A program made the position numbers and the translations under genes. Under the pieces are notes generated by a model. It saw only the letters and a list, made by a program, of their open reading frames with translations. It searched no databases and was not told the origin of the DNA. From IMG/VR virus record IMGVR_UViG_3300036770_004723, positions 124,001 through 188,000 of that record: a stretch of 64,000 nt of DNA, one strand, 5' to 3'. Positions 5,015-64,000 of this stretch are shown one piece after another (position 1 is the first letter of the stretch; every line of letters begins with the position of its first letter).

Positions 5015-6169
5015 ATGGCTGTTAAAAAATCTACAAGTAAAAAATCCAACATTGTATCCGAGAATCTTCCTGAAAAATATAGACCTGTTACATTAGATGA
5101 TCTTGTTGGTCAAGATTCAGCTGTGTCAATGATTAAAGGCTGGATCAAAAAGAAAAGATTTCCTTCAACTATCTTAATAAGTGGTACAACTGGTGCAGGT
5201 AAAACCACACTTGCACGTATGATCGCACGTTATATAAATTGCGAAAAGCATACATCTTGCGGCAAATGTGATTTTTGTAAGATAAGTAAAGAAGAGGTTT
5301 TTGATTTACTTGAAATCAACGCAGGTACAAACGGCAACATCGACGATGTTAGATCTCTTATTGAAAAAGCCAAAAGATTACCGACCTTCAATAAATATGT
5401 TGTTCTTATTGACGAGGCTCATTTACTTGGAGATAAAGCAGAAAGCGCTTTGCTTGTTCCGATAGAAAAACCTTCTAAAAATTCTATTTGGATACTTTGC
5501 ACAACAGACGTAGATAAAATAAAACCAACTGTTAAAAATCGTTGTGCGCATATTTCTCTGAAACCTGTTCCAGAAAAAGACATTGCCTTACGTTTATTGG
5601 ATATCTCTAAAAAAGAAAAATTCGAGGTAAAAGACAAAGAACTCTTTAAAAAATGCTTGACCAAGATCAGTGAACTTTCTTACGGCCAAGTAAGAAACGG
5701 CATTAGTATGCTGGATACATTAATGAGTCAAATTAACGGCGGTAGTAAATTAGATCTGAAAAACTTAGATCAATTAATTACTACTGCTAGTGATGAAGAT
5801 CTAAATCAAGTATGTGCCAATGTTTTACACGGTGTTTTAAGTCACGATTTAAAGGCAATTGTAAAAAACGTAAAACAGTGTAAAGAGCCTTTACGTTTGA
5901 TAATGAATTTACGTTTCTTAGTAGATAACATTATTGATTCTGATATAGGTATTTCAAAATTTACACCTAATATAACCAAAAGTTTTAATCAACTTGTTAC
6001 CAAATCTAAGATTAAATACAATATAGCCAGTTTAGTAAAAATTCAGTCTCTTTTAATTCAAGTACATTTACATATTGTGCAAGTTCCTTCTTATCCTGCC
6101 TCAGTAGGTCTTTACACTTCATTATGTGATCTTTGTGTTGACGATTACTTTAAAAAAGTTAAAGGATGA
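5015..6169 (+). CDS. dnaX: Clamp loader ATPase, DNA polymerase III gamma/tau-like (gamma length)
   Basis: EKYRPVTLDDLVGQ, Walker A GTTGAGKTT, Zn module C-x4-C-x2-C-x2-C, EINA, IDEAH, NRC (SRC-like). Confidence 0.9.
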   Translation: MAVKKSTSKKSNIVSENLPEKYRPVTLDDLVGQDSAVSMIKGWIKKKRFPSTILISGTTGAGKTTLARMIARYINCEKHTSCGKCDFCKISKEEVFDLLEINAGTNGNIDDVRSLIEKAKRLPTFNKYVVLIDEAHLLGDKAESALLVPIEKPSKNSIWILCTTDVDKIKPTVKNRCAHISLKPVPEKDIALRLLDISKKEKFEVKDKELFKKCLTKISELSYGQVRNGISMLDTLMSQINGGSKLDLKNLDQLITTASDEDLNQVCANVLHGVLSHDLKAIVKNVKQCKEPLRLIMNLRFLVDNIIDSDIGISKFTPNITKSFNQLVTKSKIKYNIASLVKIQSLLIQVHLHIVQVPSYPASVGLYTSLCDLCVDDYFKKVKG

Positions 6170-12635: not shown

Positions 12636-12953
12636 ATGAGCGAATCTTTTTCTTTAGTGCGATATAGTCCTTGCCGTAACAAAAGAAAAACATACTATTT
12701 CTCTATACTACCTAAAGACTTCAATGTTCCTAGTATTACATTCACTGACTATACTTACTCTAAGCTAATAGATGGAAAGTGGAAAATATTAAAAACATTT
12801 AGTGCCATAGGTCATCCAAGCAATTTAACAAATTTAGATGTCCCTGACTTTGTTTGGAAAATGGCCTACGCTCACTATATAAAATTCATAAAAAAGAATT
12901 TATTAATTCACCATCATAAGGGAACGTATGTTTCACGCAGTATTTTCAAGTGA
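12636..12953 (+). CDS. Hypothetical protein
   Basis: 105-aa ORF with GAAGGT upstream. Confidence 0.6.
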   Translation: MSESFSLVRYSPCRNKRKTYYFSILPKDFNVPSITFTDYTYSKLIDGKWKILKTFSAIGHPSNLTNLDVPDFVWKMAYAHYIKFIKKNLLIHHHKGTYVSRSIFK

Positions 12954-13977
12954 CTGGCACTTTGATGGATTGAGAAATCATTATCCACAAGATCATGCTA
13001 GACGTACAATGCGAGAAGTAGAGAAAGCTTACCAGTACGCTATTAAAAAATCAATTCCTTATATGATTGTTGCTGGTGATATAAGTGACAGTTATAAGAT
13101 GACTCCTGAAAGTTTGAAAGCTCTTTTGGAGTTATTGATTAGACACGACGATCATGTTACAACCTACTATATGACAGGTAATCATGACTACGCCGATTCG
13201 ACAACTACGAGTTTGAATATATTTGAATCTATGGTAGAGTTTAAAATGTTAAAAAACTTCATTGTAGTTAAAGATCTTAAACAGATCAAACTCGATGGTG
13301 TAACTTTAAACTTCTGCCCATTTCCACATACTCAACTACAAAAAGTCAAAGCACCTTGCTTGAATATCATTCATCAAGATGTTGCAGGTGCCGTAGGTGA
13401 CAACGGCCGCGAATTAAAAGTAAAACATGATATTGAAATAGATTCTGACAAAGATTTCACTGTAAGCGGCCATATACATAAACATCAGTATCTTAAAAAA
13501 CGAAGATTGCTGTATAACGGATCTCTGTTTCAAAAGACCTTCGGCGAAGAGTTACCTAAAGGCTTTGTTGATCTAAAGGCTAAAGTAGTTAACGGAAAAT
13601 TGAAGGTAACTTGGGAATTTGTGGAGAATCGTCCTCATTTTGAGTTACGTACTATCAAGGTGCTAGATCAAAAACAATTCTCAGACCTTGAAGATGATCC
13701 AAATGTCCGTTATAGGATTTATGTTAGTGATGACGTCGTAGTTCCAGCTAGACTAAGGCAGCAGTATACTAATATTGATCAGCTGTGGTCTATAAAAGGG
13801 AAAAGTCTAACCAAGGATTTTGATGTAGAAAATTTGAATAGTGAATTAAAAGACTTACCTAAAATTGACCCTTTGCTTGGCTTAAAAGATTTTTTCAAAA
13901 AGAATAAAAAAACAAAATCTGATTTTTTGGAAGCTAAGCAGATTGTAAAGCAAGCACTCTCCGAATTAGGTTATTAA
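12928..13977 (+). CDS. sbcD: SbcD/Mre11-like nuclease
   Basis: SDWH, AGDISD, GNHD, HQ, SGHIHKHQ, YNGSLFQKTFGE..KGF motifs. Confidence 0.9.
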   Translation: MFHAVFSSDWHFDGLRNHYPQDHARRTMREVEKAYQYAIKKSIPYMIVAGDISDSYKMTPESLKALLELLIRHDDHVTTYYMTGNHDYADSTTTSLNIFESMVEFKMLKNFIVVKDLKQIKLDGVTLNFCPFPHTQLQKVKAPCLNIIHQDVAGAVGDNGRELKVKHDIEIDSDKDFTVSGHIHKHQYLKKRRLLYNGSLFQKTFGEELPKGFVDLKAKVVNGKLKVTWEFVENRPHFELRTIKVLDQKQFSDLEDDPNVRYRIYVSDDVVVPARLRQQYTNIDQLWSIKGKSLTKDFDVENLNSELKDLPKIDPLLGLKDFFKKNKKTKSDFLEAKQIVKQALSELGY

Positions 13978-57939: not shown

Positions 57940-59515
57940 AATCAAACCATTTTATTCTATATCGGCTAGACGTGAAATAACGGTTGAGCCTGATTGGTGG
58001 AAAAAACTCGGTGAAGCTAGTCGTAAAAATTATTTAAAGAAACATCCAACTAGCCAAATGGCTAAATTTATTAAGAAGCAAGAAGAAAAGAAAAGAAAAG
58101 CACGTCTTAAAAAAGCTGAAAATAAAAAATCAGAGTTACCTAAGGTAAATCATGTAGATCCTGTTGTTGAAGTAAAACCTGAAAAAGTAGAAACAAAAAA
58201 TGCAGGTAAGAATTTCGCAGAACGGGTAAACACTAGATTAAAAGATTTTTTCTCAAATAAAAAACAAAGAATCAAAGATTACACTAGTGTACAGTTAAAA
58301 GCAGTTGGAGAAAAGATTACTCGTCAGGAAATCAAAAGACGTGCTGCTGAAAAACTACCTTATATAAAAGAAACCTTAATGGAATCTCAGAAAAAATTCA
58401 TGTCCAGCATAAACTCTGTTGGATCTTATATAGATAATTCACTTTCACCTGTTAAAAAACAAAATTTAGGTGAGTGGTTAAAATCTAGATTAACAGGTAA
58501 AGGCAGTAATGAAGCCGGAGAAAAGACGGGAAGTTTGATTGCTGTTAATATTATAACAGCTGCTTTAGGCTTAGGTGCTTTGATTGCAGTAACATCTGGT
58601 GTTGCGCCTCTTGCTGGTGCATTAGCCGGTGCATTTTTTGGATTTAACGATTACCGTAGATCTCTTCCAGATAAAGTAGTAGAAGAAACGAAGAAACGAA
58701 GAAGCAAAAAGAAACCTGTACAGGATTTAAAAGATGAATCTGCAAAAGATTTGTATAAAGAAGAACCTGAGGCCGTAAACCAAGAACCTGAAACATTAGA
58801 TCAAGCATCTAAAGAAATAGATCTAGCCGTAGCTGATGTTGAAAAAGCTATGGAAACCTCAGATGATGTTGTTGAAAAAGCCTCAGAACTTGAATCTAAA
58901 TCCAATGACGAACAAGAGATAGTAGATAATCCTGTCAGATACTTAACTGAAGAAATCGCGTTATGGTTAAAAGATCAAGATCAAGATCTAATTGCGAATA
59001 AAATAGCTGAATTAGCTGCTATAGAGGAAATGATAAACGAAGGTTATTCACCTAACGTTTCAGATCTTTCCGATGAAGAAATTGATAAACTTCTAAACAG
59101 TGATGTAGAGATTATCTCAAATCATCTTCAAAGTTTATCCGAAGAAAAAGAAGATTATGAAAGCGAATATGTACCTGATGCCACTGTTAAAAAACTAACT
59201 TTACGTTGCGACAAGCAGTGCATTAGATTACCTTTGAACGAAAGATGGCGATACAATATCCGTTATGGTGACAGTATAATAGGTAATATCCGGTGCATCG
59301 TAAAGAACACTGGAGGTAAATTTAGCCGTAATTGGATTTGTGTTTTAGAAGACGGCTTCAATGAAAGCGTGTACCGGTCAGGTAAGCCTATTCTAAACAA
59401 TGAGCCTTATACCTTGATTAAAAACGGAAAAATTTACCTAGTGAATCCTATTAAACAAACATTTGATGAAACTTGGTCTTGGGCTAAGCTTAATATCGAC
59501 AAGGATTTTTTATGA
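57920..59515 (+). CDS. Putative internal head/ejection protein with hydrophobic hairpin
   Basis: FYSISAR leader; basic N-half; Gly/Ala-rich hydrophobic stretch; acidic C-half. Confidence 0.68.
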   Translation: MKKKCVEIKPFYSISARREITVEPDWWKKLGEASRKNYLKKHPTSQMAKFIKKQEEKKRKARLKKAENKKSELPKVNHVDPVVEVKPEKVETKNAGKNFAERVNTRLKDFFSNKKQRIKDYTSVQLKAVGEKITRQEIKRRAAEKLPYIKETLMESQKKFMSSINSVGSYIDNSLSPVKKQNLGEWLKSRLTGKGSNEAGEKTGSLIAVNIITAALGLGALIAVTSGVAPLAGALAGAFFGFNDYRRSLPDKVVEETKKRRSKKKPVQDLKDESAKDLYKEEPEAVNQEPETLDQASKEIDLAVADVEKAMETSDDVVEKASELESKSNDEQEIVDNPVRYLTEEIALWLKDQDQDLIANKIAELAAIEEMINEGYSPNVSDLSDEEIDKLLNSDVEIISNHLQSLSEEKEDYESEYVPDATVKKLTLRCDKQCIRLPLNERWRYNIRYGDSIIGNIRCIVKNTGGKFSRNWICVLEDGFNESVYRSGKPILNNEPYTLIKNGKIYLVNPIKQTFDETWSWAKLNIDKDFL

Positions 59516-60051
59516 AACCTAAAATTTTAGCTTTAAGTAGTGGTACTGCAATTTTGTGTGATTCGGATTACGAAGCTCAATCTTTAGTTGATTTTCCACC
59601 TAATGAGCCTTTAAATTTATTTAAAGTTTTGGATTTCGTTAAAGCAATGTACGATGATGCAATTTTTGCCCTGCAAAAGGCTACCAGACCTGTATCTAAT
59701 TCTAAATTCAGTCAAGAAAAAATTGCATCTGATTTCGAAGCACTGGAAAAAGCAATAAATTTTCATCTGAGAAATCAGCACAACGGTCTGCACGAAGTGT
59801 ACAATTGTTTAAATTTACTCAGAAACCGATTAGATTTGGAAACTCGATCCAAACATCCTGTACCTAATTGTTTAAAATTGAAAATTTATCTTGATACTAT
59901 TTGCAGTAAATTTGTACAAGAAAACAAAGGTATTGATTTGCTTGCTACCATGATATTTGAAGACGGTAAGAGTTTACGTAAAAATCCTCTTCTTAAAACC
60001 GACCACGAAAAACGCCTTGAAGAGTATCTGGCCAAAAAACAATTAGATTGA
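59512..60051 (+). CDS. Hypothetical protein (MKPKILALSS leader)
   Basis: AAGGA SD; ATGA overlap. Confidence 0.72.
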   Translation: MKPKILALSSGTAILCDSDYEAQSLVDFPPNEPLNLFKVLDFVKAMYDDAIFALQKATRPVSNSKFSQEKIASDFEALEKAINFHLRNQHNGLHEVYNCLNLLRNRLDLETRSKHPVPNCLKLKIYLDTICSKFVQENKGIDLLATMIFEDGKSLRKNPLLKTDHEKRLEEYLAKKQLD

Positions 60052-60058
60052 GGTAAGT

Positions 60059-60853
60059 ATGTTAAACAAGAAAATAGATTTAAATTTTAAATCAAGTTCT
60101 TTTGATCTTAGTATGTTGAATCGTTATAATATAGGTGAAGGCGAAGGTCGTGGTATTAGTTTGCATGAATTATCTAACAAGAATAAAAACATCGAAGTTA
60201 AGCCTGATATGGCAGGTGGCTGTGATAATGTTATTCTCGATGTTAACTGTTGGCTTCCCGCTGCCGCAAAAGAAATGAATATTAGCCCTAATATTCGTGA
60301 TTATGTAATGGTCCCGACTCCGGCACTTATTACAGATCTGCCTAATACAAACGGTGATAGTGCTAGCCTTAAAGAATTATTACGCTTTAATGTTAAGATG
60401 GGACGTCAAGCATACAAAACGTTTCAGGGTAAACCTACGTTTGTTGAACACGCTAACTCTGATCACACTAAAGCTAAAGGCATTATTCTTGATGCTTATT
60501 TAAAACCTTTAAAAGGATTCAAGGGTGAATTAGCTAAGTTAGTTTTATTATTAGCTTACGATAGAACCCGTGATCCAGAAGCTTGCAATAAAATTCTTAC
60601 CAATCGCTGTAATACTCATAGTGTTGGATTTTATTATACAAGTTACACTTGTAGTATTTGTGGCCATACAACACATCAAGACACTATGAAATTGTGTAGC
60701 CACACTCGATTAATGAAAAAACCTTATATGTTGAACGGCCGTATTTGTTATCGTTGGTGTCATGAGATTACAGGATTCGAATGTAGTCAAGTTGAAAATC
60801 CTGCGTATGTCAGTAATCAACACGATCATAGCAAAATTCTTATGGTGAGATAA
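60059..60853 (+). CDS. Putative prohead (capsid maturation) serine protease, HK97/herpes-assemblin fold, with Zn-finger insert
   Basis: NTNGD, GKPTFVEH (His), HSVG (Ser), CSICGH...CSH, FECSQVENPA (Glu, E-x-S-x-V-x-x-P-A). Confidence 0.72.
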   Translation: MLNKKIDLNFKSSSFDLSMLNRYNIGEGEGRGISLHELSNKNKNIEVKPDMAGGCDNVILDVNCWLPAAAKEMNISPNIRDYVMVPTPALITDLPNTNGDSASLKELLRFNVKMGRQAYKTFQGKPTFVEHANSDHTKAKGIILDAYLKPLKGFKGELAKLVLLLAYDRTRDPEACNKILTNRCNTHSVGFYYTSYTCSICGHTTHQDTMKLCSHTRLMKKPYMLNGRICYRWCHEITGFECSQVENPAYVSNQHDHSKILMVR

Positions 60854-60854
60854 T

Positions 60855-61802
60855 ATGGAATTCAAATACATTGCAGATATACCATTCGTTTACGGTGATT
60901 GGTTTAAGATTTCAAATGACAACCCATTTTATTCTGTAACAATGGATAGTAGGTTAAAAGTAAAAGATGGTAACGGAGCTATTTCTCCAATTACTTTTGA
61001 AGAGTTACGTCAATTACTATTGAATAGCACTACAACAATGGGTAATCAAATTAACCATGCTGAAGTATTCGCTTCATTATTAGATACAGATGTAGAAACT
61101 TTGGCTAAAACCGGTGAATTACCTGATTTCACTAAAACCGCTTCCACGAGTAATGGATATTCTGCTTATCGAGTGGTAAATAATACTATACCCTTAGGTA
61201 CATCTATACCACCTAAATTTACATTGCTTGACCGTGCTAGTGTTTGGTCTTCTCGTGACATACTTCCTCTTGAAGGTATAGAGCAAGTTGCTGTAGATAA
61301 TGCACTAAATCATTTGGGCAATAAAATGATTACAGCACAAAAGAAATTCATTTTATGTAAATCACACCAAATCCCTACTTGTTACGGTCAGTCATTTAAA
61401 AGTAATCAACTAGATGTACATCAATACATAATCTTAAACTTCCATCAATTACAAGGTATTGCTTCTGGATCTGTAACTGCCCAATTTATATGTCAGGTAC
61501 TTACACACGAGTACGCCCATTATATTTTCGATCACGGTATAAAACTTTCGCAGAAAGAAAGATTCAAAAAATTATTTGCAGGACGTGGTGTGCATAAGGA
61601 TCAATTCAACCATCCCGGTTATGAGTATCCTTGGTATAAAGAGGCATGGGCTATATTATGTGAATACATGGTGCATGGTAAATCTGCTCGTGGTCTTAGC
61701 ACTGTTGAAGGTTGGGAAATCGCTGAGCAATACTTTGACAATAATTTTATTAAGAACGGTCATCCTACAGGTGATAGTCTTGAACATTTGATTAAGGTGT
61801 AG
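60855..61802 (+). CDS. Zincin-like metallopeptidase
   Basis: VLTHEYAHY (HExxH) and downstream EAWA third-ligand motif. Confidence 0.7.
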   Translation: MEFKYIADIPFVYGDWFKISNDNPFYSVTMDSRLKVKDGNGAISPITFEELRQLLLNSTTTMGNQINHAEVFASLLDTDVETLAKTGELPDFTKTASTSNGYSAYRVVNNTIPLGTSIPPKFTLLDRASVWSSRDILPLEGIEQVAVDNALNHLGNKMITAQKKFILCKSHQIPTCYGQSFKSNQLDVHQYIILNFHQLQGIASGSVTAQFICQVLTHEYAHYIFDHGIKLSQKERFKKLFAGRGVHKDQFNHPGYEYPWYKEAWAILCEYMVHGKSARGLSTVEGWEIAEQYFDNNFIKNGHPTGDSLEHLIKV

Positions 61803-61804
61803 GT

Positions 61805-62500
61805 ATGAAAATCACAATACGTATGTTCAGCCTATCTAATAACGTAGTCCCATTGATTAAAATACCTAATCTAGCTGAATTACACGAACTATTCAAGAAC
61901 CTTAAACTTAAGAATAACTCTGATCCTAAAGTAATGTCTGATTTTAAACATTTATATAAAATTTATGAAGTAGCTTCTGAAACAGGGCCTTATAAAATTG
62001 CAGATGAATGTTTTGACTTGCTTTCAGACTTAAGACTGGCACGAAATGTCTTAGCTGTCGAAGGTGCTTTTAAAGATACTGTTGTGCAGGCGTGGATAAA
62101 AAAATTTGAGATTGAGCCTCAACTAATAAATGTAACTCGTGTGGCAACAAAACAGAGTTTACTGCAAGCATCAAAAGAAAGAAATGTAAAAGCGAAAAAA
62201 GCATTTAATGATTTGATGGATAAAGCAAAAGCAGTATCACAAGATCTAAAAAAGCAAAACTTAAAGAAGCTTAGTAAAGCAGTTATGACGTTCTCAGAAT
62301 TGCTTGACTCTGAGCGTACATATTTGAGTAAGAGAGAGATTGAAAAATATGAAACACTAATAAAGTTGTTAAACATTGAAATCTCCTTAAACTCTGAAAA
62401 CCTAGATGTTCAAGAGCGATCAGATTTACTCAAACAAAAGAGTTTAGTATTAGTGCGCTTTAGCAAACTTGACGGCATAAACCCATTTACTTTAATATAA
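61805..62500 (+). CDS. Helical hypothetical protein (MFSLSN leader)
   Basis: AAGG SD; 231 aa. Confidence 0.72.
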   Translation: MKITIRMFSLSNNVVPLIKIPNLAELHELFKNLKLKNNSDPKVMSDFKHLYKIYEVASETGPYKIADECFDLLSDLRLARNVLAVEGAFKDTVVQAWIKKFEIEPQLINVTRVATKQSLLQASKERNVKAKKAFNDLMDKAKAVSQDLKKQNLKKLSKAVMTFSELLDSERTYLSKREIEKYETLIKLLNIEISLNSENLDVQERSDLLKQKSLVLVRFSKLDGINPFTLI

Positions 62501-62503
62501 GGC

Positions 62504-62893
62504 ATGAAAATGAAAATTAAGGTTAGATTAATCTCTACTTCGGCATCTAATAGTAAAACTCCAGAAATTAAATCAAAAATATCTGAATTGGCTTCTTTGC
62601 TTTTTGAGTCAAAAAATAAAATAATTAAAGAACTTAAAGTAACCAAGCCTTTAGTTAAATCTGTTGAATCACTAGGTTACGCTGTTCGATTGGCGCGTAA
62701 GTCTCACGTAGCGCAGAATAAATTAGATGATCTTGCTTCTTTGCTTGGTGTTAATCCAGCACATTTAACATCTGCTGTAGATAAAACAGGTTATTGTCTT
62801 CATTTCAGTTCAGGTGCTGCAACTAAAGCCATAGCTTCTTTAAAAAGAATGGCTAAGGCAGAATCTGTGGAGAGTTCTTCTAAAAAAGCCTAA
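62504..62893 (+). CDS. Basic hypothetical protein (LISTSA leader), possibly truncated
   Basis: 129 aa; the following gap looks like decayed coding sequence. Confidence 0.65.
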   Translation: MKMKIKVRLISTSASNSKTPEIKSKISELASLLFESKNKIIKELKVTKPLVKSVESLGYAVRLARKSHVAQNKLDDLASLLGVNPAHLTSAVDKTGYCLHFSSGAATKAIASLKRMAKAESVESSSKKA

Positions 62894-63114
62894 TAGAGAG
62901 TAACCTAAGAAAAGAATAAGATCTTTTAGATAAAGGACTTGAAATTGCGGCCAAATGAATTTGCTTTTGCTGATCGGGTAGAAACTTGTTGTTAAAAATT
63001 CTAAAACTCACGATGTAAAAAGCTTTAATTACTCCGGCAAAAACTATTACATATAACATCACAGAATCTGCGACTGCTCTCCCATTTAAACGACGTTAGT
63101 ATTAAGGAAGCACA

Positions 63115-63669
63115 ATGAAAATTTTCGTATCGCAATCAGCTGAAGTTACACAGCAAACTTTAAAACGTAAGATGAAAATCGGCGCTAAAGTACAATTACT
63201 TATGGTCGCTTCTCCTTCAGAAATAGGAACTTTAGGTCGAGGCAAAGCATCTGTAACAATAGCACATAATTATGTTGTTACAGATATTCAAACAACTAAA
63301 TCAGGTGACATTAAAAACTGTACACTTACAGTAAAAGGACCTAAGCCTTCACCGACATTAGGTTTAAAATCTGTTGAAGTACTAACCGCAACTACATTGG
63401 CTAAGTTGATGTCAACTAAACTTAATAAAGATTCAAAAGTTGGAACTAAATCTTTAAAGTTTGTCACGGTAAAATCTAAAGACACTGCTATGGGTAACGC
63501 TAAAGATTCCAAGTTAGCTCAACTTAAAGATAAAGTTAAAGAACTTGAATCTGCATATAAAAAGGCGATATCAGATTACCATAAAGCAGAAACTGCTGTT
63601 GATAAGGCAGATAATGCACTTGATAAAGCGAAACGTGCTTTAGATCTTTATATGAGTAAAACGCTGTAG
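63115..63669 (+). CDS. Basic protein with MKIFVSQSA leader and C-terminal coiled coil
   Basis: AAGGA SD; 184 aa. Confidence 0.78.
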   Translation: MKIFVSQSAEVTQQTLKRKMKIGAKVQLLMVASPSEIGTLGRGKASVTIAHNYVVTDIQTTKSGDIKNCTLTVKGPKPSPTLGLKSVEVLTATTLAKLMSTKLNKDSKVGTKSLKFVTVKSKDTAMGNAKDSKLAQLKDKVKELESAYKKAISDYHKAETAVDKADNALDKAKRALDLYMSKTL

Positions 63670-63759
63670 GTGGTTTACTTCCCACTAAAGTTAAATTAAC
63701 TGACTCTATAAAGATCTCTGATCTTGATAAGGAATTCGAGTTTGTTGAGTTTAAAGCTT

Positions 63760-64000
63760 AATTGAAAACATGTGATTGCTGCAATTTAGATTCAGCAATT
63801 TTCTACATGTGACCATTTTATTTAAAAGAATTATCCACAAGGTAGGAGGTGATCCATATCTCGTGGTAACTACGCCACGTAAAAGATTGTAGTAGAGCAA
63901 TGGCTCGACTGCATAGCGCAGACAACTTCTTTCTATTAGAGGATTTGCCGTGAAAAACAATGTCAGTGGCGATGTAAGTAATTAAACGAGTGTGTGCGGT
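63760..64000 (+). ncRNA. Candidate structured RNA (runs off the window)
   Basis: No long + strand ORF; at least five consecutive hairpins and a three-way junction; AGGAGGTGATCCA. Confidence 0.4.

What the first reader, a model, noticed from the sequence alone, without database searches (positions are those of the whole stretch)
63760..64000. Structured non-coding region with a 13-nt perfect complement to the 16S rRNA 3' end
Seen: AGGAGGTGATCCA (63844-63856) complements 16S 5'-UGGAUCACCUCCU-3', much longer than the SD sequences I noted at real genes here. It precedes only a 9-codon GTG minigene (63863-63892) whose start is buried in hairpin CGTGGT/GCCACG. Around it are a long hairpin (63768-63810), a three-way junction (about 63883-63928, with GAGC/GCTC and CTGC/GCAG arms) and another stem (about 63945-63972). 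Known: SD-like elements without a linked gene can park 30S subunits and stabilise RNA (STAB-SD). Inference: a phage ncRNA that binds or sequesters ribosomes, or is protected by them.
Basis: partly seen in the sequence, partly recalled or inferred. Interest (0 to 1): 0.65.

Follow-up and report, generated by a model that had tools for sequence, protein, structure and literature searches.

The report
Ribosome-docking RNA element in jumbo phages
Between two head genes of an uncultivated giant phage lies a conserved, folded, non-coding RNA whose front end can pair unusually strongly with the end of ribosomal 16S RNA, so it probably docks ribosomes at a spot where no protein is started.

Summary
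AGGAGGTGATCCA (63844-63856) is a perfect 13-nt complement of 16S rRNA 1528-1540. Its predicted duplex is -25 kcal/mol, against a mean of -5.5 (best -10.7) for the window's real ribosome-binding sites.

It is the 5' part of a 93-nt block (63828-63920). That block is the best-conserved DNA of the region, cannot code on either strand, and matches no Rfam family.

I found 12 sequence variants on about 20 contigs, all from one clade of uncultivated jumbo phages and none in bacterial genomes. Flanking genes are not orthologous between variants.

Two diverged variants keep the 16S complement with other letters (9 pairs; 18 pairs with 5 G-U) and have no start codon behind it, so this is an orphan Shine-Dalgarno site.

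Behind it:
- a covarying hairpin whose loop ACUAC can pair with an invariant GUAGU (H-type pseudoknot);
- two small hairpins;
- an ordinary ribosome-binding site with a 2-18-codon ORF at a near-fixed distance;
- a covarying terminator-like hairpin, then the next gene at about 64033.

The long hairpin 63768-63810 is specific to this window.

Best reading, inferred only: a cis-acting module that docks ribosomes on the late head-gene transcript. This is a new RNA family, and its function is untested.

The parts
63828..63920 (+). Conserved non-coding core of the element
   Evidence: Covariance-model hits: R1 at 63828-63920 with 115.7 bits, R2 at 63835-63920 with 105.1 bits. Identity to relatives is 83-88%, against 63-74% for neighbouring coding DNA. 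All three + frames carry stops, and variants differ by 1-nt indels.
63844..63856 (+). Orphan Shine-Dalgarno site: 13-nt perfect complement of 16S rRNA 1528-1540
   Evidence: Relatives keep 14 Watson-Crick pairs (L001), 11 plus 2 G-U (L042), 9 (L011), or 18 pairs including 5 G-U (L051).
63835..63866 (+). P1 hairpin, which half-masks the Shine-Dalgarno site. Outer part: CCAC/GUGG (63835-38 with 63863-66). Inner part: 63840-47 with 63853-61. Loop: GGUGA.
   Evidence: Predicted. Only one-sided changes occur, and they keep pairing through G-U. The outer part competes with P2. Opening the 13 nt costs about 7 kcal/mol.
63862..63879 (+). P2 hairpin, CGUGGU/GCCACG, loop AACUAC
   Evidence: 4 of 6 pairs show changes on both sides (L011 CCCAGA/UCUGGG, L051 CCAG/CUGG, L044 G-U). 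0 of 500 shuffles reach the observed covariation.
63869..63893 (+). Predicted H-type pseudoknot. Loop ACUAC (63869-73) pairs with GUAGU (63889-93), across an A-rich linker (63880-88).
   Evidence: Both pentamers are invariant in all variants except one base in L004. L011 can extend the pairing to 7 bp, CUACUAC/GUAGUAG. There is no covariation, so this rests on complementarity and conservation.
63895..63906 (+). P3 hairpin, GAGC/GCUC
   Evidence: L051 has GAGA/UCUC, a change on both sides. L011 and L042 keep only GAG/CUC.
63909..63921 (+). P4 hairpin, CUGC-AUAGC-GCAG
   Evidence: Covaries: L004/L045 GUUAC/GUAAC, L011 GCCCUC/GAGGGC, L051 ACCUC/GAGGU.
63863..63892 (+). GTG mini-ORF (9 codons) directly behind the Shine-Dalgarno site. 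It spans P2.
   Evidence: It has 6-9 codons in the close variants (M-x-T-T-P/T-R). L011 and L051 have no start codon here. It is therefore not a defining feature.
63938..63985 (+). Ordinary ribosome-binding site (AGAGGA, 63938-43) and tiny ORF (GTG 63950 to TAA 63985, 11 codons)
   Evidence: A Shine-Dalgarno-led start sits 90-112 nt behind the orphan site in 11 of 12 variants. ORF lengths are 2-18 codons. Peptide types are ..GGGG(G/S)N..ALLI, and MQ. Close pairs differ partly by synonymous changes.
63994..64000 (+). 5' arm of a terminator-like hairpin. It runs past the window end, to about 64013. The next gene starts at about 64033.
   Evidence: Read on L003, the same contig. A hairpin with a different sequence, followed by a U/pyrimidine run, sits in every variant. 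Where a tiny ORF is present, the hairpin begins 7-12 nt behind its stop. L051 has a canonical GC stem followed by UUUU.
63768..63810 (+). Specific to this window and not part of the conserved element.
   Evidence: Absent from L038, which is 88% identical across the element. There a 269-aa gene runs to 9 nt before the element.

Best explanation
What it is: 63828-63920 is the core of a conserved, non-coding, + strand RNA module, about 190 nt long and ending near 64013. It is carried by one clade of uncultivated jumbo phages inside their head-gene operons, usually right behind the stop codon of whatever gene lies upstream.

Proposed mechanism:
1. A 30S subunit, or a ribosome that has just terminated on the upstream gene, is caught by the 13-bp (9-18 bp in relatives) duplex between the orphan Shine-Dalgarno site and the 3' tail of 16S rRNA. 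The duplex easily outcompetes the weak hairpin that masks the site.
2. No productive start follows. There is no conserved start codon, and a stable hairpin/pseudoknot begins 6 nt behind the duplex.
3. The docked ribosome therefore acts in cis. It shields the transcript and serves as a standby or loading site for the ordinary ribosome-binding site of a 2-18-codon ORF about 100 nt downstream.
4. That tiny ORF ends 7-12 nt before a terminator-like hairpin. Ribosome traffic on it would then set how much transcript and translation continues into the next head gene.

Shown: conservation, non-coding nature, strand, the complementarity and its maintenance, and covariation of P2, P4 and the terminal hairpin.

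Inferred: ribosome binding, the pseudoknot, and every functional consequence.
For: Strength of the complement: it is perfect over 13 nt and by far the strongest 16S-tail complement in the window and in the related loci L051 and L009.

Maintenance of the complement:
- L001 gains a 14th pair.
- L042 changes C to U and A to G, both giving G-U pairs.
- L051 differs at 3 of 13 positions, all pair-preserving, and extends to 18 pairs (-27.7 kcal/mol).
- L011 keeps AAGGAGGUG.
- The bases GGUG, in the loop of the local hairpin in the close variants and in a different local helix in L011, are invariant in all variants.

Orphan status: no start codon follows the site in L011 or L051.

Evidence for RNA on the + strand:
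- G-U to Watson-Crick exchanges that would be mismatches on the other strand.
- P2 covariation that 0 of 500 shuffles reach.
- All long ORFs lie on the + strand.

Evidence for a unit:
- The start of the tiny ORF sits at +90 to +112 in 11 of 12 variants.
- A covarying hairpin plus U run follows in every variant, 7-12 nt behind the tiny ORF's stop where there is one.
- The module is kept while its neighbours change, and in L051 it sits at another genomic place.

Precedents:
- tisB standby site: a 30S-binding region 100 nt upstream of the ribosome-binding site, plus an essential pseudoknot (PMC7708055).
- mccA: ribosome binding to a tiny ORF controls an intrinsic terminator and stabilises the RNA (PMC4231749).
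Against: - No transcript ends, ribosome footprints or binding data exist for these uncultivated phages.
- The pseudoknot stem never varies, so it has no covariation support.
- The tiny ORF's ribosome-binding site is only moderately structured: opening energy 5-13 kcal/mol, against a mean of 5.7 for ordinary genes of the window.
- Forcing the orphan site open gives no consistent change in that accessibility.
- L042 lacks the tiny ORF. In L011 the order of hairpin and ORF differs.
- L043, a relative with 62% protease identity, lacks the element within 10 kb either side of the protease. The element is therefore dispensable.
- Only three deep lineages exist, so the statistics are thin.
- Pairing beyond 16S position 1530 would have to open the base of helix 45 in a mature 30S subunit (established 16S structure).
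Confidence: 0.45

Rival explanations
1. A trans-acting RNA of about 190 nt that blocks or sequesters ribosomes. It would be released by processing and by the terminal hairpin. It would occupy the anti-Shine-Dalgarno tail of 30S subunits, while its pseudoknot keeps it out of the mRNA channel.
For: - The duplex is very long and stable.
- There is no usable start codon in two lineages.
- A terminator-like 3' end exists, canonical in L051.
- The module is independent of its neighbouring genes.
- The phage's own genes use weak Shine-Dalgarno sites, mean -5.5 kcal/mol.
Against: - No promoter room upstream in 9 of 12 variants.
- One copy per genome stretch examined.
- Titrating tens of thousands of ribosomes would need extreme abundance.
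- It does not explain the conserved ribosome-binding site and tiny ORF.
Confidence: 0.15
2. An ordinary, very strong ribosome-binding site for a translated minigene (GTG, 6-9 codons). It would be a coupling or minigene device like the two-codon bar minigenes of phage lambda, and the rest would be mRNA structure.
For: - In all close variants GTG lies 13 nt behind AGGAGG (6 nt behind the extended complement) and opens a 6-9-codon frame.
- The third position of codon 4 varies silently: ACG, ACA, ACU.
- L051 has a two-codon ORF (AUG CAA UAA) further down.
Against: - L011 and L051 have no start codon behind the site.
- Codon 2 changes freely (V, G, E, D).
- The GTG and the silent position are both explained by P1/P2 pairing.
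- The start codon is buried in a GC-rich stem.
Confidence: 0.12
3. A structured RNA that binds a phage or host protein or a small ligand (operator or riboswitch-like). The purine run would then be a structural or recognition element, and its match to 16S a by-product.
For: - Nearly all single-stranded stretches are invariant (loop GGUGA, linker, GUAGUAGAG, CAUAG), more than secondary structure alone needs.
- The compact pseudoknot plus stacked hairpins resemble small aptamers.
Against: - The substitutions in the purine run track pairing with 16S rather than sequence identity.
- No Rfam riboswitch or leader family matches, even at E-value 10.
- The gene context (packaged head proteins) suggests no metabolite.
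Confidence: 0.13
4. A self-cleaving ribozyme related to pistol. It would have a hairpin whose loop pairs downstream, an A-rich linker, and a stacked second hairpin.
For: - The hairpin CGUGG..CCACG followed by UUAAA is letter-for-letter like the start of the env25 pistol construct (PMC6101554).
- The hairpin-loop pseudoknot stacked on a following hairpin resembles the pistol layout.
- Pistols often lie near phage genes (PMC6154101).
Against: - No hit to the Rfam pistol model, even on a 216-nt search at E-value 10.
- There is no room for pistol's P2 5' strand or for the internal loop with the catalytic purine-32 and G40.
- No counterpart of the P2 3' strand with the G-U cleavage junction is present.
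Confidence: 0.04
5. A DNA-level signal, such as a packaging, recombination or homing site, or a recently transferred mobile segment. It would have no RNA function.
For: - The block is far better conserved than its surroundings.
- It sits between non-orthologous genes and at a different place in L051.
Against: - Compensatory changes in three hairpins and strand-specific G-U pairs point to folded RNA.
- Graded divergence (L042, L044, L011, L051) argues against recent transfer only.
Confidence: 0.04

Closest known systems
STAB-SD / polypurine 5' stabilisers (Bacillus thuringiensis cryIIIA leader; phage SP82 early RNA in B. subtilis). Recalled from my own knowledge of the literature.
   Same: A Shine-Dalgarno-like sequence with no linked gene is thought to hold a 30S subunit on the RNA.
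   Different: - Here the complement is 13-18 nt, not about 8-9.
- It is half-masked in a hairpin and followed by a pseudoknot, a tiny ORF and a terminator hairpin.
- It lies between genes rather than at a mapped 5' end.
- Cultured relatives infect Gram-negative hosts.
Ribosome standby site of the tisB toxin mRNA (PMC7708055, PMC6690012)
   Same: A 30S-binding region lies about 100 nt upstream of the ribosome-binding site of a very small ORF, with an RNA pseudoknot beside the binding region.
   Different: - tisB standby binding depends on protein S1 and is not based on a Shine-Dalgarno site.
- Its target site is strongly sequestered and encodes a toxin.
- Here the target ORF has 2-18 non-conserved codons and its site is only moderately structured.
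mccA leader: ribosome-controlled intrinsic termination and RNA stabilisation in the microcin C operon (PMC4231749)
   Same: A tiny ORF lies immediately upstream of an intrinsic terminator inside an operon. There, ribosome occupancy decides termination and makes the short RNA stable.
   Different: - No MccB-type enzyme is known here.
- An extra orphan Shine-Dalgarno site and pseudoknot lie upstream.
- Several of the tiny peptides here end in Asn, as MccA does, but others end in Ile or Gln.
Pistol self-cleaving ribozyme (Rfam RF02679; PMC6154101, PMC6101554)
   Same: A hairpin loop pairs with a downstream strand across an A-rich linker, stacked on a following hairpin. Both are associated with phages.
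   Different: It lacks P2, the catalytic internal loop and the G-U junction, and does not match the Rfam model.
mRNA pseudoknots that trap 30S subunits on the platform (E. coli rpsO/S15 operator). Recalled from my own knowledge.
   Same: A Shine-Dalgarno site next to a pseudoknot could hold the 30S subunit in a non-productive complex.
   Different: In rpsO a real start codon and a repressor protein are involved. Neither is evident here.

Membership tests
Any Rfam 15 family | Match to a curated covariance model | tested here: not met
   No match at gathering score over the whole window. Only chance-level matches up to E-value 10 on 601-, 216- and 196-nt stretches.
STAB-SD type stabiliser | Shine-Dalgarno-like complement to the 16S 3' end with no start codon at working distance | tested here: met
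   13 nt in the window. No start codon in L011 or L051. In the close variants GTG lies 13 nt from AGGAGG and is buried in a stem.
STAB-SD type stabiliser | Location at or near the 5' end of a primary or processed mRNA, with stabilisation that depends on 30S binding | not testable with these tools
   No transcript data. The element lies 6-35 nt behind an upstream stop codon in 9 of 12 variants.
STAB-SD type stabiliser | Host with 5'-to-3' exonucleolytic decay (RNase J, Firmicutes) | tested here: inconclusive
   The host is unknown. The nearest cultured relatives by protease infect Dickeya, Erwinia, Pseudomonas and Alcaligenes.
Ribosome standby site (tisB type) | 30S-binding region far upstream (about 100 nt) of the regulated ribosome-binding site | tested here: met
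   The tiny-ORF start lies 90-112 nt behind the orphan site in 11 of 12 variants. Binding itself was not tested.
Ribosome standby site (tisB type) | Regulated ribosome-binding site locked in stable structure | tested here: inconclusive
   Opening energy is 5.2-13.2 kcal/mol, against a mean of 5.7 (sd 2.7) for 46 genes of the window.
Ribosome standby site (tisB type) | Pseudoknot required next to the standby region | tested here: inconclusive
   Stem 1 covaries. Stem 2 (ACUAC:GUAGU) is invariant, so it is compatible but unproven.
Pistol ribozyme | Helix P2, internal loop with conserved purine-32 and G40, and the G-U cleavage junction | tested here: not met
   The pseudoknot strand follows the linker directly and is separated from the next hairpin by one base. 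There is no P2 partner and no Rfam hit.
Pistol ribozyme | P1 loop pairs with a downstream strand, stacked between P1 and P3 | tested here: met
   ACUAC/GUAGU lies between the P2 and P3 hairpins of this element. This is a prediction only.
Leader-peptide or mccA-type attenuator | Tiny ORF ending just upstream of an intrinsic terminator inside an operon | tested here: met
   The stop codon lies 7-12 nt before a covarying hairpin plus U/pyrimidine run. L051 has a canonical terminator.
Leader-peptide or mccA-type attenuator | Alternative antiterminator pairing controlled by the ribosome | tested here: inconclusive
   No consistent alternative pairing was found. The thermodynamic coupling test was negative.

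The most novel reading that the evidence does not exclude
The module yields an abundant RNA that pairs in trans with the anti-Shine-Dalgarno tail of host 30S subunits. Its pseudoknot keeps it out of the mRNA channel. The phage would thereby reprogram ribosomes away from host messages with strong Shine-Dalgarno sites and towards its own late messages, whose sites are weak. This would be an RNA counterpart of protein-based masking of the anti-Shine-Dalgarno sequence.
Probability: 0.12. Interest if true: 0.9.

Novelty: new variant of a known kind. Interest (0 to 1): 0.6.

Why it matters
If the element really docks ribosomes, it would be the first conserved phage RNA family built around an over-long Shine-Dalgarno:anti-Shine-Dalgarno duplex. 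It would offer a compact natural case for three questions:
- how a tethered, non-initiating ribosome affects RNA stability;
- how standby initiation works at a distance;
- how termination inside an operon is controlled.

It also marks a control point within the gene array for packaged head proteins of jumbo phages, whose regulation is unknown. As a tool, a 90-nt ribosome-tethering module would be useful in synthetic biology. Even on the cautious reading, it is a new structured RNA family absent from Rfam.

Tried and rejected
- **tRNA or tmRNA:** none found.
- **GenBank phages:** no DNA match to 63000-64000.
- **Coding potential:** stops in all + frames and 1-nt indels rule it out.
- **Chance pattern matches:** L006/L007 (inside a head-morphogenesis gene), L034/L035, L053/L054 and ten bacterial or archaeal contigs L055-L064 all score below 11 bits with the model.
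- **Bacterial genomes:** no copy in one genome per species.
- **Other complementarity to 16S:** chance level only.
- **Outer helix UGUAGU/ACUGCA and the closing helix predicted by RNAfold:** no covariation, and they conflict with P4, which does covary.
- **Long-range pairing of GCCACG with GUGGCG inside the tiny ORF:** not present in the ..ALLI lineages.
- **Allosteric link between the orphan site and the tiny ORF's ribosome-binding site:** no consistent effect.
- **Hydrophobic 20-codon alternative frame in L004/L045 (type I toxin idea):** all six differences between the two are non-synonymous in that frame, against 3 of 6 in the other frame.
- **Second copy in L011 (7972-8048, minus strand, 27 bits):** it lies inside a coding gene and lacks the 16S complement, so I treat it as a false positive.
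- **Frameshift, readthrough or bypass signal:** no ORF crosses the element and there is no slippery site.
- **A third covariance model including L051:** not built, because MAFFT put the P2 3' arm of L011 and L051 one column out of register.

Full report
**Source and setting**

The window is part of IMGVR_UViG_3300036770_004723, a 286.6-kb uncultivated phage contig (loci L003 and L008). Nearly all long ORFs lie on the + strand and G+C is about 34%.

The finding lies 3 kb downstream of a prohead protease gene (60059-60853; PHROG head maturation protease, E-value 1e-90). The nearest cultured relatives of that protease (45-50% identity) are jumbo phages of Dickeya, Erwinia and Pseudomonas, smaller phages annotated on Alcaligenes and Salmonella, and the environmental Phage NCTB.

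The genes around the finding form an array of paralogues that start MKI(K)VF(V/I)SES. In related loci the same array holds DarA_C and ART-PolyVal domains typical of packaged head proteins.

**The observation**

AGGAGGTGATCCA sits at 63844-63856. It is unique in the window. It is a perfect complement of E. coli 16S rRNA 1528-1540, checked against the rrsH gene itself.

Its predicted duplex with the 16S tail is -25 kcal/mol. The 55 gene starts of the window average -5.5, with a best of -10.7. They use short GGAG/AGGA motifs, so the host evidently uses Shine-Dalgarno recognition. The next best site anywhere in the window is -17.1.

**Conservation**

Exact and degenerate pattern scans, a protease-anchored scan of IMG/VR and contigs fetched through protease homologues were searched with two covariance models.

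The element is present in:
- the window lineage (L003, L008, L038, L039);
- L032;
- L001/L002/L033;
- L040;
- L041;
- L004/L005/L009/L010/L031;
- L045 (core identical to L004, but a different downstream leader, counted as its own variant);
- L044;
- L042;
- in diverged form, L011/L036 (59 bits) and L051 (25 bits).

It is absent from L043 (62% protease identity), Phage NCTB and all more distant relatives examined, including with filters off. It is absent from one genome per bacterial species. The window holds one copy.

Between the window and the L009 lineage the element is almost the only stretch of the region alignable at DNA level. It is 86% identical over 92 nt, while the proteases are 58% identical as proteins.

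All three + frames carry stops, and variants differ by single-base indels. It is therefore not coding. It matches no Rfam family.

**It is an independent unit**

The genes on either side are not orthologous between lineages. The order of the head genes is shuffled relative to the element, and in L051 the element lies 6.5 kb upstream of the protease instead of downstream.

In 9 of 12 variants the stop codon of the upstream gene lies 6-35 nt before the element. The window is an exception. Its upstream gene (63115-63669) is shorter than its 269-aa homologue in L038, and a window-specific hairpin (63768-63810) fills the gap.

**Structure**

- **P1 and strand.** RNAalifold and single-sequence folds put the 16S complement in a weak hairpin, 63835-63866. 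Changes in its 5' arm are one-sided but keep pairing through G-U. That fits the + strand and not the minus strand.
- **P2.** The next hairpin (63862-67 with 63874-79) shows changes on both sides at 4 of 6 pairs. No shuffle in 500 reaches the observed covariation.
- **Pseudoknot.** The P2 loop ACUAC and the pentamer GUAGU 15 nt downstream are invariant and complementary. In L011 the complement extends to 7 bp. With the A-rich 9-11-nt linker this gives a classical H-type pseudoknot. It is predicted, not proven.
- **P3.** GAGC/GCUC is GAGA/UCUC in L051.
- **P4.** CUGC/GCAG becomes GUUAC/GUAAC, GCCCUC/GAGGGC or ACCUC/GAGGU in other lineages.
- **Rejected helix.** The outer helix that RNAfold draws around P3 has no covariation and conflicts with P4 and the pseudoknot.

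**The 16S complement is what is kept**

- L001 inserts an A that adds a 14th pair.
- L042 changes the last two positions to U and G, both still pairing as G-U.
- L051 differs from the window at three of the 13 positions (A to G twice, C to U once), each again pair-preserving. Its flanks extend the duplex to 18 consecutive pairs (-27.7 kcal/mol), the strongest site in that 15.7-kb locus.
- L011 keeps AAGGAGGUG.

Of the six or seven substitutions seen inside the segment, only one (U to G in L011) breaks pairing. Two of the preserving changes would also keep the local hairpin, so this is suggestive rather than decisive. However, the GGUG bases are invariant everywhere, although they sit in the loop of the local hairpin in the close variants and in a different local helix in L011.

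The GTG mini-ORF behind the site (63863-63892) has 6-9 codons in the close variants. No start codon exists there in L011 or L051. The site is therefore an orphan.

**Downstream half of the unit**

In 11 of 12 variants an ordinary Shine-Dalgarno motif and start codon lie 90-112 nt behind the orphan site. In the window these are AGAGGA at 63938-43 and GTG at 63950. They open an ORF of 2-18 codons.

Three peptide types occur: ..GGGG(G/S)N, M..ALLI and MQ. Close pairs differ partly by synonymous changes, which suggests the frame is read. A two-codon version suggests that the act of translation matters more than the product.

The stop is followed after 7-12 nt by a stable hairpin whose sequence differs in every lineage, plus a U/pyrimidine run. 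L051 has a canonical GC stem followed by UUUU. The next gene then starts 20-45 nt on. In the window the hairpin is at 63994 to about 64013 and the next gene at about 64033, both read on L003.

**Mechanism**

What is shown is a conserved + strand RNA with a selected, very long complement to the 16S tail and no conserved start, a covarying multi-hairpin fold, a tiny ORF and a terminal hairpin.

I infer that ribosomes are caught at the orphan site and cannot initiate there. These may be free 30S subunits, or ribosomes that have just finished the upstream gene a few bases away. The docked ribosome would act in cis as shield and standby loader, and ribosomes on the tiny ORF would modulate the terminal hairpin.

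The closest precedents are the tisB standby site with its pseudoknot (PMC7708055) and ribosome-controlled termination and stabilisation at mccA (PMC4231749).

Two tests of finer predictions were weak or negative. The tiny ORF's ribosome-binding site is only moderately structured. Opening the orphan site does not consistently change its accessibility.

I give the cis ribosome-docking reading 0.45. About 0.75 goes to the narrower claim that pairing with the 16S tail is the selected property.

**Rivals**

The rivals are a trans-acting ribosome-blocking RNA, a plain minigene ribosome-binding site, a protein- or ligand-binding fold, a pistol-like ribozyme, and a DNA-level signal.

The start of P2 plus linker matches the env25 pistol construct letter for letter. 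However, pistol's P2, catalytic loop and cleavage junction are missing, and the Rfam model does not hit.

**Verdict**

The finding is real and more than chance. It belongs to a new, narrowly distributed RNA family.

Noticed in passing
window 63115-63669; the next gene at about 64033 (L003 993-1826); L004 and L009 arrays (for example the reverse complement of L004, 7337-9592): Arrays of paralogous genes downstream of the prohead protease all start with MKI(K)VF(V/I)SES. This looks like a short N-terminal propeptide or capsid-targeting tag, cut after Glu by the protease, on packaged head proteins. Related loci carry DarA_C and ART-PolyVal domains in the same array.
   Followed up: partly
window 63670-63810: The 184-aa gene ending at 63669 matches only the first ~125 residues of its 269-aa homologue in L038. 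Another frame stays open for 29 codons after the stop (to about 63760). The hairpin 63768-63810 follows. The gene's C-terminal part appears to have been replaced or broken in this phage.
   Followed up: partly
window 58000-64000 compared with L002, L009, L011: The order of head-module genes is shuffled between related jumbo phages. For example, the 315-aa gene at 60855-61802 lies upstream of the RNA element here but downstream of it in L009 and L011.
   Followed up: partly
L004 (reverse complement 5255-5317) and L045: A 20-codon hydrophobic ORF (VYMIVAVAVLVAVVVIKLFG) overlaps the tiny ORF in another frame. All six differences between the two phages are non-synonymous in that frame, so it is probably a by-product of the GT-rich sequence.
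   Followed up: partly
L011 13028-13045: A second strong 16S-tail complement (AAGGAGGTGA, -21.4 kcal/mol) lies inside the 338-aa gene 12754-13770 of this relative. It could be an internal start or chance.
   Followed up: no
L050, L051, L052 (relatives fetched through the protease): Precomputed Pfam hits list the anti-defence families Tad6, Tad2-like and Acb1 within a few kb of the prohead protease. L049 shows an intein in a topoisomerase gene, and a GGDEF / Cas10-palm-like gene next to the protease.
   Followed up: no
tiny ORFs of the window (63950-63985), L038, L004, L045, L044, L011: Six of the tiny peptides end in Asn followed by TAA, and several have a Gly run before it. Microcin C precursors also end in Asn, which is required for their adenylation. 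No MccB-type gene was looked for beyond the loci in hand.
   Followed up: no
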